Notes under the pieces: model-generated
What the model saw: the letters and a program-made list of their open reading frames with translations, nothing else
Databases searched by the model: none
What the model was told of the DNA's origin: nothing
Source: Macrostomum lignano
Taxonomy: Eukaryota
Length of the DNA stretch: 64,000 nt
Reading direction: 5' to 3'
Assembly (NCBI GenBank): GCA_002269645.1
Contig: NIVC01002218.1
Location: 46,504 to 110,503 of the forward strand
Shown: positions 20-53,546 of the stretch, in pieces
How the letters are laid out: the number at the start of each line of letters is the position of its first letter
Numbering within the stretch: position 1 is the stretch's first letter
Program-made: the position numbers and the translations under genes

Positions 20-3000
20 ATGCTGGCATTCAGGCTCATCAGGATGCTTTCAAGAATTTGTGTCTTTTTCGCCCAATCCGCCGTGTTTTTCAGCTCGGTA
101 ATATTCACTGATTGCCTAAAAATCAAAGGTTAAATAATCGGATAAATGCTACTAATAAATTGAAACTACTAGTAGTAGGCTAAACGGCCATATTCGCACA
201 ATCTTCAGAAATAGCTTACAAAGCCTGCGGCGTGTAACGCCAGCTTGACTGCCAAGACGGCAGCCGGTAGGTGACGTCATTCTTACTCTGATTGCAGGCC
301 TGATCCGGGGGCTTTGAGAACCGGTTCACTTTGTCGTAGCGCATTCGCAGCTCCAGGTGCTGGCCAGGGCTGGCTGTCAGGGCCTTGTCTCGCCAGGGAA
401 ATTGGCCGACTGGAACAACTACCACCTGTGCATTGGATTTTGGTGGATTACAGACAGGTGCTGATATTGTCTAGCAGGTGTTTATACTGTGTCTAACAGG
501 CGCTGATACTGTGTCTAACAGGTGCTGATACTGTGTCTAACAAATGCTGATATTGTGTCTAACAGGTGCTGATATTGTCTAACACGTGCTGATATTGCCT
601 AACAGGTATTGATACTGTGTCTAACAGGTGCTGATATTGTCTAACAGGTGCTGATATTGTCTAACATGTGCTGATATTGTCTAACAGATGTCTAACAGGT
701 GTCTAACAGGTGTTTAACAGAACGTCTGTTACCTGCATTGCGCTGAAACTGTCGTCATTGGGATTTTCAACGCCTGGGAAGACCACCCGGGACATTCGAT
801 CAATTCCCGGCAGCTGCTGTCCCAGAGAGTCCGTGGCATCCGTGAAGTAGCTCACAGTCAGCGTGGAATCTGTCGCCTTCACGTCCTTGCTCTGCTGCAC
901 CCATTTCTCCTGGTTGAACCGGTGGCAGACGCCGAATTCCGGATGGAACACCGTCGTGAAGTCGTCGATAGTGCACAGATGCTCGCCAAAGGTGCAGCCC
1001 GTGAAGCCGATGCCCATGCTGCTGCTGAACCGGCTGGCCAGCAGGGCGCTGCCGATGCGGTCCCGAACCAGGCCCGGGATGCTCTTCGTCTTGCGGGCTG
1101 CGGTTTGTGTCCGAGAATGGATGTGTCCGAGAATAGGTGTGTCCGAGACTGGGTGTGTCCGAAACTGGGTGTGTCTAAAACTGGGTGTGCCTGAGACTGA
1201 GTGTGTCCAAAACTGCATGGGTGTGTCCGAGACTGGGTGTGTCCGAAACTGCACGAGTGTGTCTGAGACTTGGTGTGTCTGAGACTGGATGTGTCCGAGA
1301 CTGGGTGTGTCCGAGACTTGGTGTGCCCGAGATTGGTGTGTCCGAGACTGGGTGTCCAAGATTGAGTATCCGAGATTTGGTGGGTCCGACACTAGGTGTC
1401 CGAGACCTTACGAGTATCCGAGACTGGGAAATTGTACTGGGAAAATTGCATTGTCCAGTCTATAGAATACTATGTACAGTACTGGAGTCCTTGCATTGTC
1501 CTTGCAGGTCTCCGAGACTAGGTGGCTAGACTGGGTGTTCGAGAATATTTAATTTCTGGAAAACAGGGAGAACATTCTGGAGGACGCTTTACATATTTTT
1601 GGTTTATGTAGAGCGCGATACTACTCACAGCAGGCATCGATGCTGCATGAGCTTAGTAGTATCTCGTCATTGGTGATTGAAATCGGACAGACTGGTTTAG
1701 CGGTGTCCACTATAGTTGTCCGGCTGAAAAAGTTAGCGCAAAATTATTTGTTATTATTCTGTAACTTTATTAACTATATAAACTCAAAGATGACTTTTCT
1801 ACTGGTAGTGGTTTGGATTTGGTTTTCAAGTATTTAAGTTTTTAATTGCATTGTCCAGTTAATAAAATACTATGTACTGGGTAAATTGCATTGTCCAGTC
1901 CATAGAATACTGTGTACTGCATAGGGTCCTTGCATTGTCCAGTCCATAGAATACTGTGTACTGCATAGGGTCCTTGCATTGTCCAGTCCATAGAATACTG
2001 TGTACTGCATAGGGTCCTTGCATTGCGCAGTCTATAGAATAATATACTACGTTGACGATTACAGATGTTATATCCAAAGCTCGCTTACATGAAGTAATGT
2101 CGGCCGGTCTTCTGCTCGGTTACCGCTGCATCCAGAAGAACCCTGGCCGCTCGACAGAAATTGTTCGCCTTCCTGCCATTGGTGTACAGCTCGAAGTCCG
2201 GGGTTTCGATGTACACATCAAGGATATTGACTGGAAGGGGGGCGTATGTCAGACAGTCACGGGATGACAGCTGTGTGTCAGACAGTTATGGGATGACAGC
2301 TGTGTGTCAGACAGTTATGGGATGACAGCTGTGTGTCAGACAGTCACGGGATGACAGCTGTGTGTCAGACAGTCATGGGATGACAGCTGTGTGTCAGACA
2401 GTCACGGGATGACAGCTGTGTGTCAGACAGTCACGGGATGACAGCTGTGTGTCAGACAGTCACGGGATGACAGCTGTGTGTCAGACAGTCACGGGATGAC
2501 AGCTGTGTGTCAGACAGTCACAGTATGTATCAGTATTCCAGACTTCGGGGTGCTTCAGGATATCTGAACTAATTAAAAGATGTGTCAGGAAGTCTAACAC
2601 GGCGGTGCAGTGGAATGCATTGAAGGTCTACCAGCGCTCACCAGTCAGGATGGAGGGTTCAGCATCGAAGCGGAAGGTCCGAGAGCCGTTAAGAAGCGCC
2701 TGTCGCATCGCAGTCCAGTCTATGCAGGAGTCCTTGGTGTTGGTGAGGCTCTTGTAGCCAGTGTAGCGCAGGTACTCCCCGCTGCTCACCTGGTCCTCGC
2801 TATTTAATGCCAAACAGTCAAACCCGGGCGAGATCGCTGGTGAAAGATTAACAAAAAAAATGAAATTTAATTTTAGTCGAAATACAACGTATTCTTTGCG
2901 ATACAGTCTACTACAGTGCGATACAGTCTACTACAGTGCGATACAGTCTACTACAGTGCGATACAGTCTACTACAGTGTGATTTAGTCTACTACAGTGCG

Positions 3001-6000
3001 ATAGTCTACTACAGTGGGATACAGTCTACTACAGTGCGATACAGTCTACTACAGTGTGATACAGTCTACTACAGTGTGATACAGTCTACTACAGTGTGAT
3101 GTAGTCTACTACAGTGCGATACAGTCTATTACAGTGTGATGTAGTCTACTACAGTGTGATACAGTCTACTACAGTGCGATACAGTCTACTACAGTGCGAT
3201 ACAGTCTACTACAGTGCGATACAGTCTACTACAGTGCGATACAGTCTACTACAGTGTGATACAGTCTACTACAGTGTGATACAGTCTACTACAGTGCGAT
3301 ACAGTCTACTACAGTGCGATACAGTCTACTACAGTGCGATGTAGTCTACTACAGTGTGATACAACCTACTACAGTAGCTAGTAAAGGCTTACGACAGAAC
3401 GGTACGTTGCAGTAGGTGGCTGACAGCTGTCCGCTGTTGCCTCTATAGAAGCAGTAAGGGCCTTCGTTGAAACTGTCGATTGAAGCTCGGAAAGGAATGA
3501 ACAGCGGGTTGGAACCTGCCCGAATCGGGTTGGAGGCTTTGGTGTGCTTTTGGCTCAATAACTCACCCATGAACTCACTCATGAACTCACTCATGAACTC
3601 ACCCATGAACTCACTCATGAACTCACTCATGAACTCACCCATGAACTCACTCATGAACTCACTCATGAACTCACCCATGAACTCATTAAAGAACTCACTC
3701 ATGAACTCACCCATGAACTCATTAAAGAACTCATGAACATTCACTCTCTTCCATTCACCCAACATACTGATCAGCCCACTCGCATTAAACCGCCAAATCG
3801 CACCTGAGCTCCGAACTTGATAGACAATCGCGGCAGCGTCTCCGCCGCAGGCTTCGGCGATATTTCCCCGGCACTTCCGGTTGCAAGCGAAGTCACTAAG
3901 GGACAGCGCGGTGACATTGCTGACCTCTTCACCGCAGAGGCACTGGTCACCGTGCAGAGCCATGTAGGTGTAATTGGCCACGTAGCAGCACTCCGCGCAG
4001 CGCTCGTGATTCATCCAACCGTATGGATCTTGCAGGCACAGGTGCGGAAAGTCCGCTGCACTCGCATTTTTATCCAGACAGCCAACGTACAGGTGCATCT
4101 GGTCTGGAATATGGTGACTCATTCTCTGGTGCACAAGCTTTAATTTCTCTACCCCCAATGAGTGTACATTGGTGACTCATTCTCCAGCGCACAAGCCTCA
4201 ATTTCTCTACCCCAAAAAGTGTACATTGGTGACTCATTCTTTAGGGCACAAGCCTTAATTTCTCTACCCCCAATGAGTGTACATTGGTGACTCATTCTCC
4301 AGCGCACAAGCCTCAATTTCTCTACCCCAAAAAGTGTACATTGGTGACTCATTCTTTAGGGCACAAGCCTCAATTTCTCTACCCCCAATGAGTGTACATT
4401 GGTGACTCATTCTCCAGCGCAGAAGCCTCAATTTCTCTACCCCCAAAAAGTGTACATTGGTGACTCATTCTTTAGGGCACAGCTAGCCTTAATTTCTCTA
4501 CTCCCAATGAGTGTACATTGGTGACTCATTCTCCAGCGCACAAACCTCAATTTCTCTATCCCCAATGAGTGTACATTGATGACAAATGCTTTCCTAGCCT
4601 GCACCCTCGCAAAAACATGCAATCCTAAAACATAGGCTATTAATCGCAATCTCAGTTATTTTAACAGGCTGAAAAAGGCTCACTCACGAGTGGAATTATC
4701 TTGAAAACTCTTCAGTGGCAAACCGCGGGGCTGCCTGCACCTGCTGTCGTCCTCGGAGTAGCCAATGGCCAAGATTTGAGCTGCCAGCGGCACCCCAGCG
4801 GCCTGAAGCTCCCTGGCCGCAGAATTCCAGCCGATGCAGTTAGCGGTGGACAAGTAGGGAGCAATTTTTGGCAGATTATTCATGTCGGACACTGGTTCCC
4901 TGACCTGGGCGGTGCCGAACAGATGTACGATGGACAAGTTTCCTATGTACTCTTCTCCGCCAAGTGTTGTACGGCAGGTGCTGACAGGGGCTAAAATAAC
5001 CGCAAGTGAAAATAACTAAGTAATACTAGAATGTTGCTACTACCGCGTGTCTAAGAAGTACATAGTGGGATCCTGGGCAATATACTGTGGTTTATTTTTT
5101 GTTCCTACTTGACACAATTTAATCACATTTTATGAAATGATTGTTGCCTTATTATTTGTCTATCCTCTATCTGTCTTATATGCATGCACAAAGGGCTTTA
5201 GCACCAGGGGCGCCAGCACCAGGGGCGCCAGCACCAGGGGCGCCAGCACCAGGGGCGCCAGCACCAGGGGCGCCAGCACCAGGGGCGCCAGCACCAGGGG
5301 CGCCAGCACCAGGGGCGCCAGCACCAGGGGCGCCAGCACCATGGCCAAAAGCATCACAGAATCGCAGTTTCCTCACTGTTCTTTCCATAGTGCAAGGACT
5401 GCGAGATGTTGCTCTCAACTGCCGAGATCACGTGCAGCAGCCCCTGGGCAGCCGGTCCATACTGGGCAGCGCTAGTCGTGCCGGATTCTGGGCTCCAATG
5501 GATGTCGAATTTCAGCTGCTTCTTGCAGTCGGTGTCGCAGGTCAGGGCCCTGGTCAGCTCTTTGATGTTCACCTGGAATGTTGTAAAATATGGCGCTACG
5601 CCTGCAGCAATGGCGCCAGCCAGAAGGGGCACCAGCAAGAACTTCAGTTACTGTAAACTACGGGCGTACCGGTGCACACGTACAGTTGAAATACATCAGT
5701 GCATAAATTGTCATAGCAACCTCGATCCTCAGAGCGCCTCACCTGCGGACTTGCCCGACTCATAGTAACCAAATCGGTCGGGCAAAAGTACACGTCGGGA
5801 AACTCGAACGGCAACGAAGTGCTCAGACTAGTTCTCAGAGGCACCGCGGCGAACTGCTGGCCGAGGCTGTACATGTGGAAAGTGAAGCCGCCGTAGGTGC
5901 CCAGCAGGAAGCAGATCCACAGGCCGCGGCCGATGGCGCCAGTCTGGGCCCCGAAGCGGCCGAGCCCGTGCGCGGTAGTGTAACCGCAGAACTGCCGCAT

Positions 6001-6033
6001 CAGCGACTCGTCATCTTCTTCTTTGGTTGCCAT
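20..6033 (-). CDS. DEG/ENaC (degenerin/ASIC-like) ion channel with kringle and WSC insertions; 3' part (TM2) lies beyond the left window edge
   Basis: Phase-consistent GT-AG exons (minus strand): 6033-5743, 5572-5377, 4990-4688, 4103-3804, 3515-3393, 2836-2642, 2230-2089, 1723-1629, 1097-733, 425-220 and, tentatively, 115-20. Family motifs: pre-TM1 TTAHG, hydrophobic TM1 (LWICFLLGTYGGFTF), FPDVYFC (cf. FPAVTIC), GCTFGEHLCTIDDFTTVFHPEFGVCHRFN, SPGQHLEL and PPDQAC. Confidence 0.9.
490..5340 (+). repeat. Set of distinct intronic minisatellites in the DEG/ENaC gene
   Basis: About 20-22 bp at 490-720; 18 bp at 1120-1425; 44 bp at 1865-2040; 29 bp at 2250-2520; 20 bp at 2900-3365; 12 bp at 3565-3735; about 58 bp at 4110-4575; 15 bp at 5200-5340. 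Confidence 0.9.
3804..4103 (-). other. WSC-domain exon of the DEG/ENaC gene
   Basis: Translation YVGCLDK...ERCAECC...YMALHGDQCLCG...ACNRKCRGNIAEACGG..AIVY matches the 8-Cys WSC pattern. The exon is 300 nt, phase 1-1. Confidence 0.85.
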
Positions 6034-19257: not shown

Positions 19258-20918
19258 ATGCTGAATAATGAAGAAGCAAAGCAAAGTGTCATTTGGTTTT
19301 TGTGGAAACAAGGAAAGTGACAGGCAGAAATTCTTCACGAGTTGCAAGCAACATATGGCAAATGTGCACCATCAAAAACAATGGTCAACAAGTGGGTGCA
19401 GCATTTTGAAGATGGCTGGGAGACAGTCGATGACCTTCCACGGAGTGGCCAGCCTGCCACCACGGTCAACAGGTCAAACATCAAGCTTGTGCGTTATGCT
19501 CTGGATATTGATCACCAAGCTACAGTGTGAGAGTTGTCAACCATTACTGGCATCTCATCAATGGCCATTCATTCAATCCTGACAGTTGAGCTTGGTATGT
19601 CACGCGTTGTTGCTTGTTGGGTCCCAAAACTTCTGATTGACCAGCAGCAGCGAGAGTGGGTCCAGGTGTGTTGGCAGCTCCTCCAGTCATATCACAGTGA
19701 TCCCAACTTTTTGGACTAGATTGTGACTGGGGATGAATCCTGATTTCACTATAGTGAGCCAGAGTCCAAGATGCAGAGCAGTGTGTGGAAGGCCAGCCAT
19801 GAGCCCACACCTGTCAAGGCCCTGACTGCACCTTCAGCTGGCAAGCAAATGGCCACCATCTTCTGGGACAAGGAGGGTATTCTGCTCATCAAATGGCTTC
19901 CTCGTGGTGCCACAATAAACAGTGAGTACTATATCCAAGTCCTGCAGAAGTTGCATGAAGCCATCAAGGCCCAGCGGCGTGGCAAGCTGAGCCATCGCAT
20001 CCTGCTTCAGCACAACAATGCTAGGCTGCACACCAGCCAGGCAACAATGGCTGCCATTTCGGACCTGGGCTTCAAGGTGCTGCCACACCCTATTGGAATA
20101 AATGTTAAAAACCCGCGGACGCGCGCTTTAGAAAAGAGTCAAACTATTTTACCGCGCTTTAGGATTATTAGAGATGTTCCAAAAGATCTGCAGTTTCGTC
20201 GAAATCAAAATTCGCTAACTTTCCAAAATCAAAATTGAAATTTCCCAAAATCATAATTCAGAAAAACAAAGTTTAGTATGATCAACACTCACTTTTTTAC
20301 TTTCAATTTACTGCTTACGCAAAAAGTAATACATGTATATGTAGTAGAAAGTAGTTTATTTTTAGCGACTTTTTAGACACTACCAAAATTTTCACTTCTA
20401 AATTTTATTTCGAAATTGAAATTCGCTCTAAAAAATTTCAAATTTTGGAAAATTGAAATTGAATTTTCGGAACATCTCTAAGCTTAATAAATTACGAGTG
20501 TATAAGCCCCTTCAACAGAGGTATTATACCCATTTCCATGTATATGTATTTGCTAGAGCAGCAGCCAGTAAGAAAGGGCAGCGCGCGCAGGCGCTGTGCC
20601 TGTGCGCGCGCTGCGCTTTAGAAAAATTTCAAAAGTGCGCCGGACACCGTCCGCGGTTTTACAACTTTTTCCTTTAGGGCTGCCACACCCACCCTACTTG
20701 CTGGACCTCGCACCCAGTGACTTCTGGCTGTTCGGAGAGATGAAAAAACCCTCCGAGGTTGCTAGTACAGCTCTCTACAGACCCTGGCATTGGCCATCAG
20801 CCAGTGGGTCAGGGGATCACCTGCCAATTTCTATGCTGCCAGCATCGAGAAGTTGCCTGAGAGGTGGCACAAGTGCATAAGCCTCAAGGGTGCCTACGTT
20901 GAGAAGCAGGAAGAGTAG
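19258..20918 (+). pseudogene. Mariner transposase pseudogene
   Basis: Motifs DDLPRSGQP, WVPKLL, IVTGDES, IFWDKEGILL, TINSEYY, LQHNNA, PHPPYLLDLAPSDFWLF and GAYVEK. Several in-frame stops, and a 592-bp insertion at 20088-20679. Confidence 0.9.
20088..20679. mobile_element. MITE inserted in the mariner transposase
   Basis: Imperfect TIR CCCTATTGGAATAAATGTTAAAAACCCGCGGACG / CGTCCGCGGTTTTACAACTTTTTCCTTTAGGG with 8-bp TSD CTGCCACA. Removing it restores KVLPHPPY. Confidence 0.85.
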
Positions 20919-23548: not shown

Positions 23549-26500
23549 ATGCCGTCCGACTCAGAATCCGACAAAGTTGAAGACGAAGAAGTCGAAGAGG
23601 AGGACGACGACGAGATCGACTCGGAAGAGCTCGAGGATCTCGAAGAGGACAACCAGCCGCCTTCGAAGCGGTCTCGGCAAGGTAAAAATTTGACCTCAGG
23701 TAGTTGCGATGTGGTCAGGCTTTACTGGACTTCTTCGGGAATCCCCTAATTTAGTTCGGGGTAGTCCCTGTTCTATTTTTAGCTCAGTCAATTGGCACCC
23801 TGTTTTTTTTCTAAGCTAGATGCCATTTGATTTAATTTCTGTAGTTCTGTGACTCATATTTTATTTTGGGTATCAATAATTTTATAATTTTTGCGATTTT
23901 TGGGAGTTCAAAACTATCAAATTGCCAAATTTTGGAGTCTGTAAACTTTGCAATTTCTGTAGGTCAGAGAGGCTAAACAGTGGAATTTGTAGGGTAGACC
24001 TGTTGGTGTTTGATTAATTATTGATTTTTTACTGATGCCAGCTGACATCCCGGTTTTCAATTTGGCAACCCAGTGTCTGAACCCAGGAAGACAAAGGGAA
24101 CCTGTGGAATCCTGTTCTGTTTTTAGCTATCATGTGGTGTGTTTTAATATGTCTGTACAAGTGAGAGAATTCCCTGTTCTATTTTTAGCTTTTGTGTGCT
24201 GCTTTCTAATATGCATATATAGTTAAGGGAATCCTTGTTCTATTTTTAGCTAACTGGTTGTTTTCCACCATGTATGTACAATCGAGGGAATTCCCTGATC
24301 TATTATTAGCCTAAATTTTTCCGGCATGCAATCGCAATGCAAAAACAATTATGCAGGCGCATCAGGCTCTGGCCAGAGGAAGTCCAGCTCAGACAAGGGC
24401 AAGCGCAGACGCGGCGACAGTCGCAAGCAGTTCGATCCGCGCAGCTTCGTAGTCGATGAGGCCGACGTCGACGATGATGATGACGACGACGAAGATGAAG
24501 ACGGAGACGATCTCGGCCTGTTGGACGAGTCCAAGCTGGCCGCGGAGACGGCCAAGGAGTTCGAGGAGCGCCTGCGCTACAACAACGACGAACGATGGAA
24601 CAGCGAGAAGGACCGGTTCGACCCCGAGGAGGAGGAGGAGATTGAGAACTATTATCGCAACCGGTATTCGCGCGGCGCCGCCGGGGCGGAGCGATTCGGC
24701 CAGGGCGCACACATGGCTGACGAGATTAGCCAGCAGAGCAATCTGCCCGGCGTCAAGGATCCCAACCTGTGGGTGGTCCGCTGCCAGGAGGGCGAGGAAA
24801 AGCAGGTTTGACTCTTTGTTGACTAGTTCTGATCTGGGCAGCTTATCTATGCATCTGTCTTTGTCTGTAAAGTCTTTGTCCTATGTATGCTGGGTATGTA
24901 TAGTCTATCTTGTGTATTCTAGGTATGTATAGTCTTTGTCCTATACATGCTGGGTATGTATAGTGCTTGTCCTATACATGCTTGGTATGTATAGCCTTTG
25001 TCCTATGTATGCTGATTGCTGAGTATGTATAGTCTTTGTCCTATACATGCTGGGTATGTATAGTCTTTGTCCTATACATGCTGGGTATGTATAGTCTTTG
25101 TCCTATACATGCTGGGTATGTATAGTCTGTCCTATACATGCTGGGTATGTATAGTCTTTGTCCTATACATGCTGGGTATGTATAGTCTGTCCTATACATG
25201 CTGGGTATGTATAGTCCGTCCTATACATGCTGGGTATGTATAGTCTTTGTCCTATACATGCTGGGTATGTATAGTCTGTCCTATACATGCTGGGTATGTA
25301 TAGTCTTTGTCCTGTACATGCTGGGTATGTATAGTCTGTCCTATACATGCTGGGTATGTATTGTGGCCCCAACCGGAGCAGTTGAAGCACCGACCTTGCT
25401 TGTGGGCACCTTTAGTTGGACATCTGCGCGCGATGTGACCGTCTTTGCCGCACTGGTAGCAACCGGATGTTCTCTGGGCCTGCCGACGGTCACCTGGTCC
25501 AGCGCGGCCTCCTCTAGCGGCGCCGCTTGTCACGGCAGCTGTCAGTGTCTCCAGCTGCTGCTCGAGTCGGGACAGCCGGTCGTCAACCACGGAGACCATA
25601 GACGAACTTGCGGGCGTGTTCTTGCTCATCACCTGCTCCAGTCTGGTGGCTCTCTCGACCAGCGTGCCCAGCGTGCATGTATCCGAGTCGCTCTCCTTGA
25701 GCAGGGCTTCGCGTATCCCTGCGCTTAATAGCTGGATAATTCTAAACTTGACCTCCCGATCACGGAGCGTTGATGGGTCATCCGGGCGGGCTCCCATGTA
25801 CAGCAGCCTGAGAGCGAATGAGAGCTCCCTGATTGACTCGCCATTCTTGCGTTGTCGACCTTGGAACTCCTGCATGGCGCGGTGCTGATTGGCAGAGCCG
25901 CCGTACTGCTGGAGAAGAAGTGCCTTGATTTTCTCATAACTCTTTTTATCGGCATCTGACATGTCCCAAACACAGACCTGGGCCTCCCCTCTCAGCAGGA
26001 GCTTCACTTTGGAGGCACGCTTTGCATCGTCCCAATTCTTGTCTTCGGCGAAGTCTTCAAAGATGCTCAGCCAAAAGTGCACGTTTGATTGGCCACTAAA
26101 CTTGGGCGGTAGTAAACTGGCGTCGTTGCTCTTCTCATCTCGCACTTCCATTCTGATCTGCCAACTTGAATTGGGCTTCGAAGCTGCTGATGTACTCGAA
26201 CCGGTTGGGAACGTGAAGGAGAAACTGAAGAACTGGGACGTGAACCCCGAACTGACAGAGCTAGAAAGAGACAAGCTGATGACCATCTTGAAAGCCAACG
26301 ACGACCTGTTCAGCACTCACGAGTTTGACCTCGGCTCCACAAGCGTACTAAAGCACCACATCGAGCTCGAGCCCGGAGCACGGCCATTCAGGCAGCGCCA
26401 GCGCCCGCTCCCCTGCCGCTGAGAGACCGAGTCGACGACAAGATTGGCCAGATGCTTGCGCACGACATCATTGAGCCGTCTAGCTCTCCATGGGCCAGCA

Positions 26501-29500
26501 ATTTGATCGTGGTCAAGAAAAAGAACGGAGACATCCGCATCTGCACTGACTGGCGCCAGCTGAATGCCGCTACGGTAAAGGACGCCTATCCGCTCCCACA
26601 CCTACAACAGTCCATGGACGCGCTCTCAGGCTGCTCTTGGTTCACGACAATCGATTGCAAGCAGGGTTTCAATCAAGTGGAAGTTGAGGAAGCCGACCGC
26701 TACAAGACGGCGTTTTACTCTACCAGAGGACTCATGCAGTTCAAGAAAATGGGATTTGGAATGTGCAACTCGCCGGCTACGTTCCAACGACTAATGGAGC
26801 TGATCATGTCTGGCCTCACATGGGAGGAGGTCCTGGTCTACGTGGATGATCTAATAGTGTTCAGTAAGAGCTTTGATCAGCATCTAGTCAGCCTACGACG
26901 GGTTTTTGAACGGCTTCGAAGCGCTGGTCTGAAACTGAACAAGGATAAGTCCGTGTTTGCGTACCGTAGTGTCAAGTACCTGGGCCATGTGGTCAGCAGC
27001 GAGGGAATTCAGCCAGACCCCAGTAAGGTGGAAGCTTTATCGAAGATTAAGACGCTGAGTTCAGCTGAGGAAGTGAGGCGATTCATCGGCATGCTGGGAT
27101 TTTACCGGCGATTCATCCAAGACTTCAGCAGGATAGCCGCGCCTCTGCATGCAGCAACGCAAAAGACCGGCTTCACCTGGACGGATGAGTGTGAGAGCGC
27201 TTTCACCAAACTAAGGGAAATGATCTGCCAGGCTCCCGTGCTTAGACTCCCAGATTTTAGCCGGCCCTTCATCCTGAGTTGCGATGCAAGCGCATTTGCA
27301 GTCGGCGCGGTTCTCAGTCAGGCACACGGAGATTCGGAACTGCCAGTCGCTTTTGCCTCAAGAACTCTGAATAAGGCAGAAAGGAACTACTCAGCTACCG
27401 ACAGAGAACTGCTCGCCTTAGTCTGGAGCCTAAAACATTTCAGGTCATACCTGTGTAACGTAAAGCACTTCACCGCGTTCACCGATCATCAGCCACTGAA
27501 GGGCCTGCTACAGACTAAGGAACCTGAAGGGCGTCTGGCGCGCTGGCTTGACACGATTCAGCAGTTCAACTTCACGCTCTGCTATCGGCCTGGTCGAGAG
27601 AATGTCGTCCCGGACATGTTGAGTCGAACCGCCACCACTCAGCTCGACAGCAGCAGGGATCAAGACTTCCTAGAGGAACAGCAGCGCGATGCGCTTCTGC
27701 AGAGTGTCTTCAAGGCGCTCACCGAGGGACGCGAGCACCTGTCCAACAGCGGTCAGCAGAAGGTCGAGGAGTTCTTGGGCGATGACGGAATTGAGATCGG
27801 ACCGCATGGCGCGCTGGTCAGGCAAGGAAAGCCGGTCGTTCCGAGCCATCTGCGAGCCGAGTTCCTGGCCGACGCCCACGATGCAGCCGCTAGCGGTCAC
27901 CTCGGCGCGGACAGAACACTACAGAAGTTGCGTGAGCGCTGCTGGTGGCCAAAAATGCAGCAGGATGTCCAGAACTGGGTGGCCAGCTGTGCAGCATGCC
28001 TTCGGCGCAAGAACAATAGTCACCCTCAGCGAGCTCCACTGCAGAGTACAGCACAGCCGGCGCGACCGTGGGAGACCGTGCAAATCGACATTAAGGGGCC
28101 GTTGCCAAGGACGCCTCGAGACAACAGCTACATTCTGAGCATCTGCGACTGCTTCTCCAAATGGATGGAAACCCGTGCTCTACCAAGTATCGAAGCCGAG
28201 CGAGTTGCTGATGTTCTGGTCCATCAAGTAGCCCTACGTCACGGAGTTCCGGACACGATTCACAGTGACCAGGGCCGGCAATTTGAGAGCCAGCTGTTTC
28301 AGTCTCTGTGTGAGCAGCTCGGTATGCGGAAGACTCGAACTTCCCCGTTTCATCCGAGTGGCAACGGCCTGGTGGAGCGCGGAAACCGCACTCTCGGTAA
28401 CATGTTGGCGACGGTCGTAGCGGAAAGCCAGGACGACTGGGATGTACAGCTGCCTTTTGTCACATGGGCATTCAACAGCTCTGCGCACTGTACGACTGGT
28501 CTGTCTCCGTTTCAAGTGCTACACGGTTGGCCACCAAGACTGCCGCTTGATGTCAAGCTGCCGCACACCAACAGCGGCGCTTCGGATACTCTGGAGTACG
28601 TCGAGGATGTTCAGAAACGGCTTTTGCAGAGTCGGAGGCTCGTCCACCAGAAGCTTCAGAGCGCGCAGACTGAGAGAAACGAACGATACAACAAGGACGT
28701 GCGGTTTCAGCCCTACAACCAAGGCGATCTGGTCATGCTAAGCTGCAAGACGGTGAAGCCTGGTCGCTCCAAGAGCCTCAGCAACCGCTGGACGGGGCCC
28801 TACGTCGTTCTCAAGCGGCTGGGTGAGGTCAACTATCGAGTGCGGCTGGCACCTGGCCTAGCGGTTCGGCGGCGTCGCAAGCTCGTGGTGCACCATGACC
28901 GCCTCAAGCCATTCGTGAAGCGGCGCGGCTCTCTGCAACTGACCGATGAGCAGCAGCCGGCTCCGGCTACCAGCACCAGTCCTGAGCAGCTGGGTGTGCC
29001 TGACGCCTGGGCTCAGCTGTCAGGCGGCAATGACGATGACGACGGTGACACCGAAGCAGCAATCGACCCGGTCGTCCCACCAGCGCTAAGACGTTCGGTA
29101 CGACAGCGGAGGCCTCCTGATTTTTATCGCCCTGAGTGAACCTTTTTTTGAACTTTTGCCATAGAGTTTTATTCCTCGTGCTTAAGGGGAAAGTGGTGTG
29201 AGTTTTGGTGTTCGTTGTGTTGGCTGTTTTGGGGGTTGGCCTGCGCTGGGGGGTTGGGCACGCTTTTATTCACCTGAACCTATATCGATCGGAATGTACG
29301 CGCGTACATAGTTAATGACAAATATATATATCGACTAACTTGGCCTTTGAGCCCTCGTACTGATTTTCTCGCAATTCTGGTCTTACACTATAGTCCGTCC
29401 TATACATTCTGGGTATGTATAGTCTTTGTCCTATACATGCTGGGTATGTATAGTCTTTGTCCTATACATGCTGGGTATGTATAGTCTTTGTCCTATACAT

Positions 29501-37640: not shown

Positions 37641-38077
37641 AATTAATCATTCAGAGTTCTAAACTTGGTTACGTGTGTTTTTTTTAATTTGTCGTCCCAG
37701 CAACACCCAGTGCTACATAAAATGGTAGGTTTCATCGTGCTGTTATTACATTATTCATATATTGCGAGTCAAATTAGTAAGCGTGATCGTTCGAAAACAA
37801 ATTTCAATTTCTATCATCTCACTCTACTACTGTTTGACTGAGGTCCAAGTAGTAGCATTAGTTTTAAAATATCGGAATGCTGTCTTATGAAAATTTGCTG
37901 TTTCAGAAAACAACAAATCATATTAGCTTGGTCAGCTCCTTATATAAACCTGTGTGTTCACCAATATATGCATGAATATTGACTCCGGCATTCTGTTTAG
38001 CGTATTACCATTGAAACCTCAATGGCTGTGTTATTTTCTGACTTGACTTTACTTTACCAAACATTTAGATTGGGGTG

Positions 38078-39665
38078 TTTGCCTGTCAGATGCTTGCCTG
38101 TCAGATGCTTGCCTGTCAGATGCTTGCCTGTCAGATGCTTGCCTGTCAGATGCTTGCCTGTCAGATGTTTGTCTGTCAGATATTTGCCTGTCAGATGCTT
38201 GCCTGTCAGATGCTTGCATGTCAGATGCTTGCCTGTCAGATGCTTGTCTGTCAGATATTTGTCTGTCAGATATTTGCCTGTCAGATGCTTGCATGTCAGA
38301 TGCTTGCCTGTCAGATGCTTGTCTGTCAGATGTTTGTCTGTCAGATATTTGCCTGTCAGATGCTTGCATGTCAGATGCTTGCCTGTCAGATGCTTGTCTG
38401 TCAGATGCTTGCCTGTCAGATGCTTGCCTGTCAGATGTTTGTCTGTCAGATATTTGCCTGTCAGATGCTTGTCTGTCAGATGCTTGCATGTCAGATGCTT
38501 GCGTGTCAGATGCTTGCCTGTCAGATGCTTGCCTGTCAGATGTTTGTCTGTCAGATATTTGCCTGTCAGATGCTTGCCTGTCAGATGCTTGTCTGTCAGA
38601 TGCTTGCATGTCAGATGCTTGCCTGTCAGATGCTTGCCTGTCAGATATTTGCATGTCAGATGCTTGTCTGTCAGATGCTTGCCTGTCAGATATTTGCATG
38701 TCAGTTGCTTGTCTGTCAGATGCTTGTCTGTCAGATATTTGCATGTCAGATGCTTGTCTGTCAGATGCTTGTCTGTCAGATATTTGCCCGTCAGATGCTT
38801 GTCTGTCAGATGCTTGCCTGTCAGATGCTTGCCTGTCAGATATTTGCATGTCAGATGCTTGTCTGTCAGATGCTTGCCTGTCAGATATTTGCCCGTCAGA
38901 TGCTTGTCTGTCAGATGCTTGCCTGTCAGATGCTTGCCTGTCAGATGCTTGCCTGTCAGATGCTTGCCCGTCAGATGCTTGCCTGTCAGATGCTTGCCCG
39001 TCAGATGCTTGCCCGTCAGATGCTTGCCTGTCAGATGCTTGCCCGTCAGATATTTGCTGTCAGATGCTTGCCTGTCAGATGCTTGTCTGTCAGATGCTTG
39101 CCTGTCAGATGCTTGCATGTCAGATGCTTGCCTGTCAGATGCTTGTCTGTCAGATGCTTGCCTGTCAGATGCTTGCCTGTCAGATGCTTGCCTGTCAGAT
39201 GCTTGCCTGTCAGATATTTGCATGTCAAATGCTTGTCTGTCAGATGCTTGTCTGTCAGATATTTGCATGTCAGATGCTTGTCTGTCAGATGCTTGCCTGT
39301 CAGATGCTTGCATGTCAGATGCTTGCCTGTCAGATGCTTGCCTGTCAGATGTTTGTCTGTCAGATATTTGCCTGTCAGATGCTTGTCTGTCAGATGCTTG
39401 CATGTCAGATGCTTGCATGTCAGATGCTTGCCTGTCAGATGCTTGCCTGTCAGATGTTTGTCTGTCAGATATTTGCCTGTCAGATGCTTGCCTGTCAGAT
39501 GCTTGCATGTCAGATGCTTGCCTGTCAGATGCTTGTCTGTCAGATGCTTGCCTGTCAGATGCTTGCCTGTCAGATGTTTGTCTGTCAGATATTTGCCCGT
39601 CAGATGCTTGCCTGTCAGATATTTGCTGTCAGATGCTTGCCTGTCAGATATTTGCCCGTCAAATG
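38078..39665 (+). repeat. 15-bp minisatellite
   Basis: Unit GCCTGTCAGATGCTT with variants; it accounts for the long spurious ORFs at 38-39.7 kb. Confidence 0.97.
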
Positions 39666-40127
39666 CCTGCCCACCGCACAATTCCCCGCTACAATGTATC
39701 GATCAATTTTTGCCTAGCTTATAGTCTTTACTTACTTCCTTAGCACGAGAATATTTTTTATCGTGAAAACCCACTTAAAGTACTGCTTGTGAGGCTTGGC
39801 AGTGTCCGGCGGGCAAGCGTGTGTAATGCCACAGATAGCGCTGCTAATACAGTTACAGTATATGTCATATTGGCAGGCAAAATTCGCACTCTTGTACATG
39901 TACGAGTACCCTGTCACTGTCTGCTGGTCTAATCTAATATCCATCACACTCTGCTCTCTACTTTTATCTGGGAGTAACGGCCCTGCGTCACATACTGATG
40001 AAGCCTGCATAGTGAAGTAGTGATAGAACTGAGCACCTACTTGATAGAGGTAGAGATAAAGAGATAGGAGCGGTAGAAATAGAGCTTGATTAGAGATAAA
40101 GATAAAACGATAGAGATTGTGGTCATC

Positions 40128-41502
40128 CTAGTGATCATGCATTCTAGGCTGGGGTCATAGTGCTAGTGGTCATGCATTCTAGGCTGGGGTCATAGTGCTA
40201 GTGGTCATGCATTCTAGGCTGGGGTCATAGTGCTAGTGGTCATGCATTCTAGGCTGGGGTCATAGTGCTAGTGGTCATGCATTCTAGGCTGGGGTCATAG
40301 TGCTAGTGGTCATGCATTCTAGGCTGGGGTCATAGTGCTAGTGGTCATGCATTCTAGGCTGGGGTCATAGTGCTAGTGGTCATGCATTCTAGGCTGGGGT
40401 CATAGTGCTAGTGGTCATGCATTCTAGGCTGGGGTCATAGTGCTAGTGGTCATGCATTCTAGGCTGGGGTCATAGTGCTAGTGGTCATGCATTCTAGGCT
40501 GGGGTCATAGTGCTAGTGGTCATGCATTCTAGGCTGGGGTCATAGTGCTAGTGGTCATGCATTCTAGGCTGGGGTCATAGTGCTAGTGGTCATGCATTCT
40601 AGGCTGGGGTCATAGTGCTAGTGGTCATGCATTCTAGGCTGGGGTCATAGTGCTAGTGGTCATTTATTCTAGGCTGGGGTCATAGTGCTAGTGGTCATGC
40701 ATTCTAGGCTGGGGTCATAGTGCTAGTGGTCATGCATTCTAGGCTGGGGTCAGTGCTAGTGGTCATGCATTCTAGGCTGGGGTCATAGTGCTAGTGTTCA
40801 TGCATTCTAGGCTGGGGTCATAGTGCTAGTGGTCATGCATTCTAGGCTGGGGTCATAGTGCTAGTGGTCATGCATTCTAGGCTGGGGTCAGTGCTAGTGG
40901 TCATGCATTCTAGGCTGGGGTCATAGTGCTAGTGGTCATGCATTCTAGGCTGGGGTCATAGTGCTAGTGGTCATGCATTCTAGGCTGGGGTCATAGTGCT
41001 AGTGGTCATGCATTCTAGGCTGGGGTCATAGTGCTAGTGGTCATTTATTCTAGGCTGGGGTCATAGTGCTAGTGGTCATGCATTCTAGGCTGGGGTCATA
41101 GTGCTAGTGGTCATGCATTCTAGGCTGGGGTCAGTGCTAGTGGTCATGCATTCTAGGCTGGGGTCATAGTGCTAGTGGTCATGCATTCTAGGCTGGGGTC
41201 ATAGTGCTAGTGGTCATGCATTCTAGGCTGGGGTCATAGTGCTAGTGGTCATGCATTCTAGGCTGGGGTCAGTGCTAGTGGTCATGCATTCTAGGCTGGG
41301 GTCATAGTGCTAGTGGTCATGCATTCTAGGCTGGGGTCATAGTGCTAGTGGTCATGCATTCTAGGCTGGGGTCATAGTGCTAGTGGTCATGCATTCTAGG
41401 CTGGGGTCATAGTGCTAGTGGTCATGCATTCTAGGCTGGGGTCATAGTGCTAGTGGTCATGCATTCTAGGCTGGGGTCAGTGCTAGTGGTCATGCATTCT
41501 AG
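40128..41502 (+). repeat. 35-bp minisatellite
   Basis: Highly homogeneous unit ATTCTAGGCTGGGGTCATAGTGCTAGTGGTCATGC. Confidence 0.97.
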
Positions 41503-42044
41503 GATAAGGGCCATTATATGACTCACAGTAACAGTATTATAATTCTAGCCAAGAATTACAGCGTTATATGTACGCATACAAGAGATTCCATATTTAGGTA
41601 GATAGTTATGAATGATTCCTAATAATTATTCAACTATCCAATTTTCCCGAGTCATTTCCCGACGCCTCTCTGGCGTCAGCGGTCAGCGCCTCCAGTAGGA
41701 TGCGGGTTGCCGGCTTAATCCGACTTGGCAATTAAATTTTTAATTATACTCATATTCTTATCACAAGTGCAGTACAGTAAAGCCACGCCATGACTGGGCA
41801 GGACTCGTGTGCACTGGGGTTGGCTGGCTCAAGTGAATGAATTGGAAAGCTTCAAAGAGTATTAAAAATGTCTGCTATCGAACATTATTGAGTTATCATT
41901 CACTGTGCTTTATTGCTGGCTCAGGAATAGTGACATAGCTGACAATTTTACTGAATCATATTTAAATAGGTAGATACAAATGCATTGCCTATCTTGTCTC
42001 TGTGTGTCTGTCTGTCTTAGTGTCTGTCTGTCTGCCTGTTTTAG

Positions 42045-46800: not shown

Positions 46801-47016
46801 TTCTGCTTCAGCTTCCCATCTCTTATTCAGTTTGAGGTCCCCATTGGCTGCAGCGCTCCAGCCAGCCACATCGGAGCAAGCAGTCCGCGGGGGGCCTTCT
46901 CACAGCTTCATCAGACCTAGAATCAGCTGAAGCTCTCCTGGCAACCCAACGGCCGCAGCACACGAACGCTGAACATCCAATTTTATTTTTTGAAAATCGG
47001 TCCGTCTGTCACAACA

Positions 47017-51589: not shown

Positions 51590-52415
51590 GTGTAATCCAG
51601 ATCTAATCATCTCTCACTCTGTGTAATACAGATCTAATCATATCTCACTCTGTATATTCCAGATCTAATCATCTCTCACTCTGTGTAATCCAGATCTAAT
51701 CATCTCTCACTCTGTATATTCCAGATCTAATCATCTCTCACTCTGTGTAATACAGATCTAATCATATCTCACTCTGTATATTCCAGATCTAATCATCTCT
51801 CACTCTGTGGAATCCAGATCTAATCATCTCTCACTCTGTGTAATCCAGATCTAATCATCTCTCACTCTGTATATTCCAGATCTAATCATCTCTCACTCTG
51901 TGTAATCCAGATCTAATCATCTCTCACTCTGTGTAATCCAGATCTAATCATCTCTCACTCTGTGTAATCCAGATCTAATCATCTCTCACTCTGTGTAATA
52001 CAGATCTAATCATATCTCACTCTGTATATTCCAGATCTAATCATCTCTCACTCTGTGTAATACAGATCTAATCATATCTCACTCTGTATATTCCAGATCT
52101 AATCATCTCTCACTCTGTGTAATACAGATCTAATCATATCTCACTCTGTATATTCCAGATCTAATCATCTCTCACTCTGTGTAATACAGATCTAATCATA
52201 TCTCACTCTGTATATTCCAGATCTAATCATCTCTCACTCTGTGTAATCCAGATCTAATCATCTCTCACTCTGTGTAATCCAGATCTAATCATCTCTCACT
52301 CTGTGTAATCCAGATCTAATCATCTCTCACTCTGTGTAATCCAGATCTAATCATCTCTCACTCTGTGTAATCCAGATCTAATCATCTCTCACTTTGTGTA
52401 ATCCAGATCTAATCA
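51590..52415 (+). repeat. 31-bp minisatellite
   Basis: Unit CCAGATCTAATCATCTCTCACTCTGTGTAAT with variants. Confidence 0.97.
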
Positions 52416-52902
52416 ACTTCAGTCTGGTTTCAAGGATTCCGTGTATATTTGATCTTCTATAGCCATCAAGCTGACAGGTAATCATCTCTTTAAGGATTCT
52501 GGTCCGTCCTTCATCTGTATGGACTTCGCCATCTTAAAGTGGGGTGTTCGCTGCGAACCTCGGGCAGTTGAGCCCATGAGCGGCTGCTGCGTTAATGAAA
52601 ATGCAAATTATTTTTTCTGGATTACCGAGTGCAGACTCAAGGAATTGAAGTTGTTTTCTTGAGTCACTCCATATCATTCTCATCTGGGCTGTCCTCAGCT
52701 TCCTTTGCTCCTCATCCGGGCAATGCCTGAGTTTAAAGTAAAAATTCCAATACATGATGTGCGCTCATTCAACAATAAAAACAAATATTTACAATCTCAT
52801 TTTTAACTGAAACTGCGGTGAAAAGTGTAAACAAGTAAAAAATGACTTGTAGAAACTTTTGTGTGCAGGGCCAGTTTAAAACTTTTAACTCTTTTCATTG
52901 GG

Positions 52903-53510: not shown

Positions 53511-53546
53511 CATGTGTACCTATCTCTTCCTATCTAATAAGCAACT

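What the first reader, a model, noticed from the sequence alone, without database searches (positions are those of the whole stretch)
1629..4990. DEG/ENaC channel whose finger domain carries two kringles and a WSC domain
Seen in sequence: between beta2 (FPDVYFC) and the conserved C-x-F...HPEFGVCHRFN segment, six exons add about 380 aa. Kringle 1 has all six Cys in kringle context: STCRTTLGGEEYIG, ANCIGW, SRCRQP, GPYCFY, TYCNVPFC. Kringle 2 also has six: FDCL...YTGYKS, DSCIDW, NNFCR, KPVC, SSCSIDAC. A full WSC domain is present as well. Established: this hypervariable finger region is the ligand/gating module of DEG/ENaC channels (ENaC protease-release site, FaNaC peptide site); kringles bind lysine or proteins; WSC is a putative carbohydrate-binding fold; kringle plus WSC is the Kremen ectodomain combination. 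Inference: this is a chimeric receptor-channel gated by a protein, glycan or matrix ligand, or tethered for mechanosensation. I do not know of a described channel with this architecture, but I cannot search to confirm novelty.
Basis: partly seen in the sequence, partly recalled or inferred. Interest (0 to 1): 0.9.

Follow-up and report, generated by a model that had tools for sequence, protein, structure and literature searches.

The report
Flatworm sodium channel with kringle-like/WSC insert
This is a real, transcript-supported gene of the flatworm Macrostomum lignano for a DEG/ENaC sodium-channel subunit. Its extracellular "finger" has gained a 386-residue cysteine-rich module, a WSC domain nested inside one kringle-like unit and followed by a second. 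No paper I could search describes this layout, and its function is untested.

Summary
The exons are real. On the minus strand, 11 GT-AG exons (6033..20) join into an open 770-aa frame. That frame is 100% identical to the first 770 residues of GenBank PAA59863.1 (Macrostomum lignano BOX15_Mlig028168g1, 1052 aa), and that annotation was derived from RNA-seq transcripts. Exons 3-8 (4990..1629) add 386 aa with 22 Cys between the ASC N-terminal part and the conserved CxF...HPEFGVCHRFN segment. This is the finger region, where ENaC gamma carries its cleaved inhibitory tract.

- **WSC and ASC:** both pass Pfam's curated thresholds.
- **Kringles:** only partly supported. Pfam Kringle gives no hit for this protein and only sub-threshold hits in paralogs. 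AlphaFold plus Foldseek did not recover a kringle fold. However, family profiles hit almost only kringle chains in the PDB (E down to 1e-6). Profile-profile comparison gives 93-96% probability, far above shuffled controls, and aligns all six Cys of each unit.
the WSC exon sits inside kringle-like 1, between Cys3 and Cys4.

The architecture recurs in at least five divergent paralog groups, all from M. lignano, and I found no paper describing it. I rate it a new variant of a known kind. The sensing or tethering role is inference only.

The parts
5743..6033 (-). Exon 1: start codon, HG motif (YTTAHGLGRF), TM1, first palm strands up to FPDVYFCPTDL; aa 1-97
   Evidence: Open frame and CAG|gtgagg donor. 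Pfam ASC profile positions 1-84, 41.1 bits. Identical to PAA59863.1.
5377..5572 (-). Exon 2: start of the finger region, aa 98-162. It ends in phase 1.
   Evidence: Acceptor ttccag|GTG and donor ACA|gtgagg. tblastn of P0001 maps residues 97-163 here.
4688..4990 (-). Exon 3 (phase 1-1): N-terminal half of kringle-like unit 1, holding Cys1-Cys3 (CRTTLGGEEYIG ... ANCIGW ... SRCRQP). It has a ~25-aa insertion and predicted helices. aa 163-263.
   Evidence: hhalign global mode aligns C1, G, Y, G, C2, W, C3-R-x-P to kringle columns. Invariant residues among paralogs.
3804..4103 (-). Exon 4 (phase 1-1): complete WSC domain with 10 Cys, aa 264-363, nested between Cys3 and Cys4 of kringle-like 1.
   Evidence: Pfam WSC 3.9e-12, 46.6 bits against a cut-off of 27.8, covering profile 1-82 of 82. 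Family profile hits Kremen1 WSC and yeast Wsc1 at about 8e-10. Foldseek hits Wsc1 at 5e-5.
3393..3515 (-). Exon 5 (phase 1-1): C-terminal part of kringle-like 1 (GPYCFY...TYCNVPFC, Cys4-Cys6), aa 364-404. A second in-phase acceptor lies at 3485.
   Evidence: The acceptor at 3515 is the one used in PAA59863.1. The 3485 acceptor was found. This part matches the C-terminal end of the Kremen1 and HGF kringles.
2642..2836 (-). Exon 6 (phase 1-1): start of kringle-like 2 (FDC ... RYTGYKSLTNTKDSCIDW), aa 405-469.
   Evidence: This is the stretch that gives sub-threshold Pfam Kringle hits in paralogs and matches tPA K2, ROR1 and HGF kringles.
2089..2230 (-). Exon 7 (phase 1-2): middle of kringle-like 2 (IETPDF ... 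NNFCRAARV), aa 470-516.
   Evidence: N, C and R of 'NFCR' are invariant in paralogs and align to the kringle NYCR.
1629..1723 (-). Exon 8 (phase 2-1): end of kringle-like 2 (KPVC ... SSCSIDAC), aa 517-548.
   Evidence: The family profile matches the C-terminal end of the ROR2 kringle.
733..1097 (-). Exon 9: channel core resumes. It starts in phase 1, so a direct E2-to-E9 join would also be in frame. Holds CTFGEHLCTIDDFTTVFHPEFGVCHRFN. aa 549-670.
   Evidence: Pfam ASC profile positions 153-287, 30.8 bits. Aligns to FaNaC 192-240 and ENaC gamma 259-289.
220..425 (-). Exon 10: ASC extracellular domain, aa 671-738.
20..115 (-). Exon 11: ASC extracellular domain, aa 739-770. The gene continues beyond the left end of the window, so the remaining 282 aa, including TM2, are not in the window.
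   Evidence: The rest of the protein is seen in PAA59863.1.

Best explanation
The region holds exons 1-11 of Macrostomum lignano gene BOX15_Mlig028168g1, a DEG/ENaC (ASC-family) channel subunit.

A cassette of six exons sits in the finger region between the first palm strands and the beta-ball segment. Four of the exons are symmetric phase 1-1, and the other two form a 1-2/2-1 pair. The cassette encodes a 386-aa, 22-Cys, N-glycosylatable module made of two parts:
- a divergent kringle-like unit with a complete WSC domain inserted in the loop between its third and fourth cysteines;
- a second, enlarged kringle-like unit.

The layout looks like exon shuffling of extracellular binding modules into a phase-1 intron. 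The gene then duplicated within the Macrostomum lineage.

The channel core keeps the HG motif, TM1, the conserved Cys pattern and a FaNaC-like TM2 with G-I-S. I therefore infer that it assembles as an ordinary trimeric Na+ channel. I further infer that the module crowns each subunit and acts as a binding or tethering site for an extracellular glycan or protein partner. Occupancy or pull would then be passed to the gate through the finger, the same region that carries the ENaC inhibitory tracts and the FaNaC peptide site.

Shown: gene structure, transcript support, ASC and WSC identity, position of the insert, conservation among paralogs.
Probable: kringle ancestry of the two flanking units.
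Inferred only: ligand or tether function and coupling to gating.
For: Gene structure and transcript support:
- GT-AG chain with compatible phases and an open 770-aa frame.
- 100% identity to PAA59863.1.
- The GenBank annotation of assembly Mlig_3_7 is built from StringTie/TACO transcripts and TransDecoder ORFs (PMC5730564).

Domain identity:
- Pfam ASC and WSC pass their curated cut-offs.
- The family profile of the insert against PDB sequences gives 44 of 46 hits to kringle or WSC proteins: Kremen1 8e-10, HGF kringle tandem 1e-6, tPA K2 2e-4, ROR1 2e-3.
- The K2 profile alone puts kringles in its top 11 hits.
- hhalign against 13 canonical kringles: K1 93% (score 41.5), K2 96% (score 51.1). 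The maximum over 200 column shuffles was 20-21, and reversed controls scored 10-11.5.
- Global mode aligns all six Cys of each unit.
- UniProt names the K2 fragment of one paralog 'Kringle domain-containing protein'.

Conservation:
- The Cys framework and the nested WSC are kept in paralogs only 30-50% identical.
- The paralog locus L002 has the same exon layout.

Channel core:
- It hits FaNaC at 5.8e-12 and ENaC gamma.
- The insert lies between FaNaC 155/192 and ENaC gamma 101/259.
- TM2 reads GLWSGISVLTVCELIE.
Against: - Pfam Kringle does not score this protein at all, and paralogs stay below the gathering score.
- The K1 profile alone finds nothing in the PDB sequence search.
- The AlphaFold model of K2 (pLDDT 73.8) is beta-rich, and Foldseek finds no kringle. 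The whole-insert model (pLDDT 58.7) recovers only the WSC domain.
- The K1 test used a construct with WSC removed.
- No functional, expression or localisation data exist for these genes.
- Three M. lignano DEG/ENaCs from a branch near FaNaCs gave no currents with the peptides tested in oocytes (bioRxiv 10.1101/2022.03.23.485451). I do not know whether they belong to this family.
- Divergence between the two near-identical copies gives only weak evidence of constraint: 6 synonymous and 6 non-synonymous differences.
Confidence: 0.6

Rival explanations
1. The module anchors or localises the channel, or helps its folding and assembly, rather than gating it. It would hold the channel in the glycocalyx, basal lamina or a ciliary or epidermal matrix, or mediate subunit and partner assembly, without passing a signal to the gate.
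For: WSC and kringle modules are generic extracellular binding modules. Nothing in the sequence shows coupling to the gate. The cassette is bounded by phase-1 introns and could be skipped in frame (E2 to E9), as expected of an accessory module. Some database paralog entries lack parts of the cassette (P0068, P0004).
Against: The insertion point is the finger, which in ENaC, ASIC and FaNaC is mechanically coupled to gating (established knowledge; position shown). The junction residues and the Cys framework are conserved among paralogs.
Confidence: 0.25
2. The module is an autoinhibitory plug, like the ENaC GRIP domain and its inhibitory tracts. The channel would be silent until proteases remove or loosen the insert.
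For: The insert occupies the stretch that aligns to ENaC gamma 101-259, which holds the cleaved tract (cleavage sites from established knowledge and the review PMC9540061). The window protein has a basic stretch, SRKTKS, right after K2.
Against: The basic stretch is not conserved. Paralogs read SRVTQS, VETSPS, YAAVPS and YTKVPT at that position. There is no RXXR site at either border. A 22-Cys disulfide-bonded module would not be released by one or two cuts.
Confidence: 0.08
3. The flanking units are not kringle homologues. They are lineage-specific cysteine-rich domains that share short motifs with kringles by convergence, and only the WSC is a recognisable shuffled domain.
For: There is no Pfam Kringle hit for this protein. 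K1 alone has no PDB sequence hit. The K2 model is beta-rich and has no kringle match in Foldseek. Both units are 55-60 aa longer than a kringle.
Against: hhalign gives 93-96% with scores about twice the best of 200 shuffles. All six Cys align, with kringle-like spacing of the last three (C-x13-C-x4-C against C-x11-C-x4-C) and of Y-x-G...C-x2-W. Nearly all non-WSC PDB hits are kringles, and each part of the query aligns to the corresponding part of the kringle. An independent automatic UniProt name exists.
Confidence: 0.2
4. The architecture is an annotation or assembly artefact. Exons 3-8 would belong to a separate nested gene, or to a pseudogenised fragment wrongly merged with the channel gene.
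For: The sister copy (L001, BOX15_Mlig007204g1) has a 6.7-kb transposon inside exon 7, yet it is annotated as if intact. So annotation in this genome can read through defects.
Against: The window copy is intact. All six exons are open only in the frame that joins E2 and E9, and the cassette has no start codon, signal peptide or stop codon of its own. The gene model is transcript-derived. The same fusion is seen in at least five divergent paralog groups and at locus L002.
Confidence: 0.03

Closest known systems
Kremen1/2 ectodomain (Kringle-WSC-CUB; PDB 5FWS and others)
   Same: It combines a kringle-type unit with a WSC domain in one extracellular module. Kremen1 is the best PDB sequence hit of the family profile (8e-10), matching both the WSC and the C-terminal end of the kringle. 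Foldseek also finds it.
   Different: The order differs. Here WSC is nested between Cys3 and Cys4 of kringle-like 1 and a second kringle-like unit follows. There is no CUB domain. The module is embedded in a channel subunit, not a single-pass receptor. The kringle-like units are far more divergent and about 55-60 aa longer.
ENaC finger/GRIP region with protease-released inhibitory tracts
   Same: Both are lineage-specific elaborations of the same stretch of the DEG/ENaC extracellular domain. The insert lies between residues aligning to ENaC gamma 101 and 259.
   Different: There is no sequence similarity to GRIP and no conserved furin or dibasic sites. The module here is built from shuffled disulfide-rich domains.
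FaNaC (FMRFamide-gated Na+ channel; PDB 7YVB, 8ON7)
   Same: It is the closest solved relative of the channel core (5.8e-12). TM2 is alike, GLWSGISVLT here against GLWMGISVLT in FaNaC.
   Different: FaNaC has a short finger at the insertion point (residues 155-192) and no extra domains. Three M. lignano DEG/ENaCs close to the FaNaC branch did not respond to the peptides tested. I do not know whether they belong to this family.
[quoted passage not shown]
   Same: They are a precedent for DEG/ENaC subunits carrying additional shuffled extracellular modules (PMC10424705).
   Different: The domain type differs (EGF). I did not check where the EGF domains sit. No currents were obtained for them in oocytes.
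Yeast Wsc1 cell-wall mechanosensor domain (PDB 7PZ2)
   Same: The WSC domain of the insert matches it by profile (8.6e-10) and by predicted fold (Foldseek 5e-5, TM-score to target 0.65). Wsc1 is described as a sensor of mechanical stress at the cell surface (PMC9024836).
   Different: It is a fungal single-pass sensor with no channel attached. A similar domain says nothing by itself about mechanosensing here.

Membership tests
DEG/ENaC (Pfam ASC, PF00858) | Profile match above the curated threshold | tested here: met
   Window exons 1-2 score 41.1 bits and exons 9-10 score 30.8 bits against a cut-off of 23.6. The full-length sister protein scores 131.2 bits.
DEG/ENaC (Pfam ASC, PF00858) | Two transmembrane helices, an N-terminal HG motif and a G/S-x-S filter in TM2 | tested here: met
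   YTTAHGLGRF and TM1 are in exon 1. TM2, GLWSGISVLTVCELIE (G-I-S), lies outside the window but is present in PAA59863.1, whose first 770 aa are identical to the window product.
DEG/ENaC (Pfam ASC, PF00858) | Trimeric amiloride-sensitive cation channel activity | not testable with these tools
   Needs heterologous expression and electrophysiology.
WSC domain (PF01822) | Full-length profile match above the curated threshold | tested here: met
   46.6 bits against 27.8, covering profile positions 1-82 of 82. PDB profile hits to Kremen1 WSC and Wsc1. Foldseek hit to Wsc1 at 5e-5.
WSC domain (PF01822) | Carbohydrate or other ligand binding | not testable with these tools
   Needs glycan arrays or pull-downs with the recombinant module.
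Kringle (PF00051) | Profile match above Pfam's gathering score (34.3 bits) | tested here: not met
   No hit for the window protein or its pieces at E<=10. Paralogs score 10.6-22.7 bits, covering only profile positions about 4-39 of kringle-like 2.
Kringle (PF00051) | Six-cysteine framework with the kringle motifs (C..G..Y.G, C..W, (N)xCRxP, PxC, C-x4-C) | tested here: met
   Six invariant Cys in each unit among paralogs. hhalign global mode aligns all six to the kringle cysteines. Both units carry large insertions.
Kringle (PF00051) | Statistically supported remote homology to kringles | tested here: met
   hhalign gives 93% (K1 without WSC) and 96% (K2), with scores of 41.5 and 51.1 against a shuffle maximum of 20-21. 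PDB profile searches return kringles at E 1e-6 to 3e-3.
Kringle (PF00051) | Kringle fold with C1-C6, C2-C4, C3-C5 disulfides | tested here: inconclusive
   AF2 models were built from only 6-9 sequences. The insert model has pLDDT 58.7 and the K2 model 73.8. Foldseek found no kringle.
Kringle (PF00051) | Lysine-binding site (the Asp pair after CRNP and the aromatic residues around PWC) | tested here: not met
   In the alignments the segment after C3 reads PPGLPL in K1 and AA.V..D in K2. The Trp of PWC is Tyr in K1 and Val, Gly or Ser in K2. The definition of the site comes from my own knowledge of plasminogen kringles.
Kremen-type ectodomain | Linear KR-WSC-CUB order | tested here: not met
   WSC is nested inside KR-like 1, a second KR-like unit follows, and Pfam finds no CUB.

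The most novel reading that the evidence does not exclude
The Macrostomum KR-WSC-KR channels are a new class of receptor-channels. A Kremen-like binding module built into the finger would directly gate a DEG/ENaC pore in response to a matrix glycan, a secreted protein, or mechanical pull through an extracellular tether. That would make it the first DEG/ENaC with an integral, genetically fused tether or ligand-recognition domain, and also an example of a WSC domain functionally nested inside a kringle.
Probability: 0.2. Interest if true: 0.85.

Novelty: new variant of a known kind. Interest (0 to 1): 0.6.

Why it matters
How DEG/ENaC channels are gated by non-proton stimuli is still only partly understood, and the nature of extracellular tethers in mechanosensitive members is a particular open question. 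A subunit with recognisable binding modules (WSC plus kringle-like units) fused into the finger would give a direct experimental handle: the sensor and the pore are in one polypeptide. M. lignano has established transgenesis (PMC5730564).

It is also a clean example of exon shuffling into a phase-1 intron of a channel gene, and of one disulfide-rich domain nested inside another.

The limits are that the family is so far seen in only one species, its function is untested, and the kringle assignment is a remote-homology call.

Tried and rejected
1. Pfam on the exon translations and on the sister protein, up to E=10, gave no Kringle hit.
2. phmmer of single kringle-like sequences against the PDB gave nothing for K1. 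For K2 it gave only a non-significant tPA kringle 2 hit (E 0.5).
3. The K1 family profile alone against the PDB gave no hit.
4. AlphaFold2 of the whole insert (9 sequences, pLDDT 58.7) followed by Foldseek returned only WSC and Kremen matches. AlphaFold2 of K2 alone (pLDDT 73.8) followed by Foldseek returned no kringle. The top hits were insignificant RNA-polymerase lobes. I treat this as negative or inconclusive, not as disproof, because the alignments were very shallow.
5. The word-indexed homologue search was insensitive here, returning 1, 2 and 4 hits, all from M. lignano. So I could not find orthologues in other flatworms or run a database-wide architecture search.
6. The exhaustive HMMER search with the insert found 519 proteins at E<=0.001. 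Among the 150 listed, only M. lignano proteins match beyond the WSC part.
7. dN/dS between the two 98%-identical copies rests on too few differences (6 synonymous, 6 non-synonymous) to be informative.
8. I considered a nested-gene or mis-annotation reading and rejected it; see the rival explanations.
9. I considered an ENaC-like protease-release mechanism and rated it low, because the flanking basic residues are not conserved.
10. Searches for the gene identifiers in the literature found nothing.

Full report
**What is in the sequence**

The window is eukaryotic DNA with short exons separated by introns full of minisatellites.

I enumerated splice sites and reading phases. They assemble into 11 exons with canonical GT-AG borders and an uninterrupted frame:

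| Exon | Coordinates | Note |
|---|---|---|
| E1 | 6033-5743 | |
| E2 | 5572-5377 | |
| E4 | 4103-3804 | |
| E5 | 3515-3393 | a second in-phase acceptor lies at 3485 |
| E6 | 2836-2642 | |
| E7 | 2230-2089 | |
| E9 | 1097-733 | |
| E10 | 425-220 | |
| E11 | 115-20 | |

The gene runs off the left end of the window.

- E3, E4, E5 and E6 are symmetric phase 1-1 exons.
- E7 and E8 form a 1-2/2-1 pair.
- E2 ends in phase 1 and E9 begins in phase 1.

The whole cassette E3-E8 therefore sits in what would otherwise be a single phase-1 intron, and it could be skipped in frame.

**Whose gene it is, and whether the exon chain is real**

A database search with the spliced product returned one hit. It was the 1052-aa Macrostomum lignano protein PAA82974.1 (BOX15_Mlig007204g1), at 98% identity and 100% coverage, with precomputed Pfam domains WSC and ASC. 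Its 90% cluster also holds PAA59863.1 (BOX15_Mlig028168g1, 1052 aa).

With the E5 acceptor at 3515, the window product is 100% identical to the first 770 residues of PAA59863.1. The window therefore carries that gene.

The GenBank annotation of assembly Mlig_3_7 (GCA_002269645.1) is transcript-derived (PMC5730564). RNA-seq and a de novo transcriptome were assembled on the genome with StringTie and TACO. ORFs were then called with TransDecoder.

I did not see reads myself.

**Domain tests**

Pfam scores:
- ASC on E1-E2: profile positions 1-84, 41.1 bits.
- ASC on E9-E10: profile positions 153-287, 30.8 bits. The cut-off is 23.6.
- WSC over its full length on E4: 46.6 bits against a cut-off of 27.8.

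Pfam Kringle does not score the window protein or any piece of it, even at E<=10.

**Relatives**

I ran an exhaustive HMMER search of 1.84 billion representative proteins with the 388-aa insert. It found 519 proteins at E<=0.001. Among the 150 listed, only eight matched outside the WSC part (P0003-P0007, P0010, P0045, P0068). All eight are M. lignano entries. They carry both GenBank PAA / UniProt A0A267 accessions and UniProt A0A1I8 accessions.

They are 30-54% identical to the window insert and keep the same order:
1. ASC N-terminus
2. CRxTxxGEEYxG ... CxxWNxAAR ... SRCRxPPGLPLxEF
3. WSC
4. GPYCF...C(N)xPxC
5. (F/Y)DC...YTG..N.T..G..C..W...TPD...NFCR...P.C...C.I..C
6. ASC continuation

The genomic locus of one paralog (L002) has the same exon layout in the insert. 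The nested arrangement is therefore old relative to the paralog divergence and is not a local accident.

**Are the flanking units kringles?**

Evidence for:
- Pfam Kringle appears as a sub-threshold hit (E 1.3e-4 to 0.76) on the YTG...C..W stretch of unit 2 in seven of eight paralogs. Apart from ASC and WSC it is the only family listed for them.
- UniProt's automatic naming calls the unit-2 fragment of one paralog 'Kringle domain-containing protein'.
- A profile of the nine insert sequences, searched against all PDB sequences, gave 46 hits, of which 44 are kringle or WSC proteins. These include Kremen1 (8e-10, WSC plus the end of its kringle), an HGF kringle tandem (1e-6, spanning the end of unit 1 and the start of unit 2), tPA kringle 2 (2e-4), the ROR1 kringle (2e-3), prothrombin (7e-3) and the ROR2 kringle (0.02, end of unit 2).
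- The unit-2 profile alone has kringles as its top 11 hits (E 1e-4 to 3e-3).
- Profile-profile comparison with 13 canonical kringles gave 93% probability (score 41.5) for unit 1 with WSC excised, and 96% (score 51.1) for unit 2.
- Controls were much lower. The best of 200 column shuffles was 20.2 and 21.1, and reversed profiles scored 11.5 and 10.1.
- In global mode all six invariant cysteines of each unit align with the six kringle cysteines. The gap in unit 1 falls exactly where the WSC exon is inserted.

Evidence against:
- Pfam's threshold is not met.
- The unit-1 profile alone finds nothing in the PDB.
- AlphaFold2 of the whole insert is poor (pLDDT 58.7), and Foldseek recovers only Wsc1 and Kremen.
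- AlphaFold2 of unit 2 alone is moderate (pLDDT 73.8) and beta-rich, and it has no kringle match in Foldseek.
- Both units are about 55-60 aa longer than a kringle.

My reading is that these are probably divergent, enlarged descendants of kringles (about 0.75). They should not be filed as bona fide Pfam kringles.

The residues after Cys3 and the Trp of PWC are not kept. In plasminogen kringles these contribute to the lysine site, as far as I know. Lysine-analogue binding is therefore not expected.

**Position in the channel**

I removed the insert and searched the channel core against the PDB. The best hits were FaNaC (5.8e-12), ENaC gamma, FaNaC1 and ASIC5.

The insertion point lies between residues aligning to FaNaC 155 and 192, and to ENaC gamma 101 and 259. 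That is the variable finger. In ENaC gamma, as far as I know, the same stretch holds the protease-released tract.

TM2 reads GLWSGISVLTVCELIE, and the N-terminus has the HG motif. The core therefore looks like a competent channel subunit.

**Mechanism**

What is shown is the architecture. From it I infer a trimeric Na+ channel whose finger is crowned by a 22-Cys, glycosylated binding module (6 + 10 + 6 Cys; six N-x-S/T sites).

| Role of the module | My estimate |
|---|---|
| Ligand sensor or tether that influences gating | about 0.35-0.4 |
| Passive anchoring or assembly | about 0.25 |
| ENaC-like protease release | below 0.1 |

I rate protease release low because the basic residues after unit 2 (SRKTKS) are not conserved in paralogs.

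Constraint evidence from the sister copy is weak:
- Exon substitutions are 0.52% against 1.84% in introns.
- Coding differences are 6 synonymous and 6 non-synonymous.

The stronger evidence is the conserved cysteine framework at 30-50% identity.

**Comparison with what is known, and novelty**

| Known system | Relation to this gene |
|---|---|
| Kremen ectodomain | Closest module combination, but the order differs and there is no CUB domain |
| ENaC finger/GRIP | Closest positional analogue |
| C. elegans EGAS channels ('EGF plus ASC', PMC10424705) | Closest precedent for extra modules on DEG/ENaC subunits |

Full-text searches found no paper on a DEG/ENaC with kringle or WSC domains, and none naming these genes. 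Two phylogenetic studies that include M. lignano DEG/ENaCs do not mention inserts.

The proteins themselves are public but uncharacterised. I therefore rate this a new variant of a known kind, with interest 0.6.

**Limits**

- I found no orthologues outside M. lignano, and the word-indexed search was insensitive.
- No architecture-wide database query was possible.
- The structure models came from very shallow alignments.
- There are no expression or functional data.

Noticed in passing
L001:6017-12882 (GCA_002269645.1 NIVC01000440.1, sister copy BOX15_Mlig007204g1): In the 98%-identical sister copy, exon 7 is split by a 6.7-kb insertion. The insertion has long terminal inverted repeats and an apparent TGTACA target-site duplication, which suggests a DNA transposon. 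The GenBank protein PAA82974.1 nevertheless reads straight through, as if the element were an intron. That copy may be disrupted or may depend on splicing out the element. The window copy is intact.
   Followed up: partly
window 454-712, 1106-1427, 1844-2041, 2247-2521, 2897-3375, 3560-3733, 4112-4583, 5200-5341: Eight of the ten complete introns of the gene in the window contain a different minisatellite, with periods of 12-115 bp and up to 24 copies at 84-100% match. Array lengths differ between the two gene copies, so intron lengths differ up to about threefold.
   Followed up: partly
window 3485 and 3515 (minus strand): There are two in-phase acceptors for exon 5, 30 nt apart. The database protein uses 3515, which adds GSNPLFIPFR. 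The site at 3485 has the stronger polypyrimidine tract. This may be an alternative 3' splice site.
   Followed up: no
window 5377 / 1097 (minus strand): Exon 2 ends in phase 1 and exon 9 starts in phase 1. Skipping the whole cassette, or any of the single 1-1 exons E3-E6, would keep the frame. Some database paralog entries (P0068, P0004) lack parts of the cassette. They could be splice variants or incomplete models.
   Followed up: no
window 26452-29139 (+), with 25252-26316 (-): An 895-aa ORF has reverse transcriptase, RNase H and integrase domains, as in a Ty3/gypsy-type LTR retrotransposon pol. A neighbouring ORF on the opposite strand has a zinc knuckle.
   Followed up: partly
window 46990-47775 (+): An ORF with a rhodopsin-family 7TM receptor domain (7tm_1, 1.8e-18), probably an exon of a GPCR gene.
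   Followed up: no
window 19771-20238 (+): A fragment of a mariner/Tc1-type transposase (Transposase_1, 1.3e-19).
   Followed up: no
window 38000-42000 and 52000-62000: These blocks have extreme strand composition skew (AT skew -0.34 to +0.56, GC skew -0.33 to +0.54). Long ORFs overlap in several frames on both strands, which suggests large simple or tandem repeat arrays. One such ORF gives only repeat-type Pfam hits.
   Followed up: no
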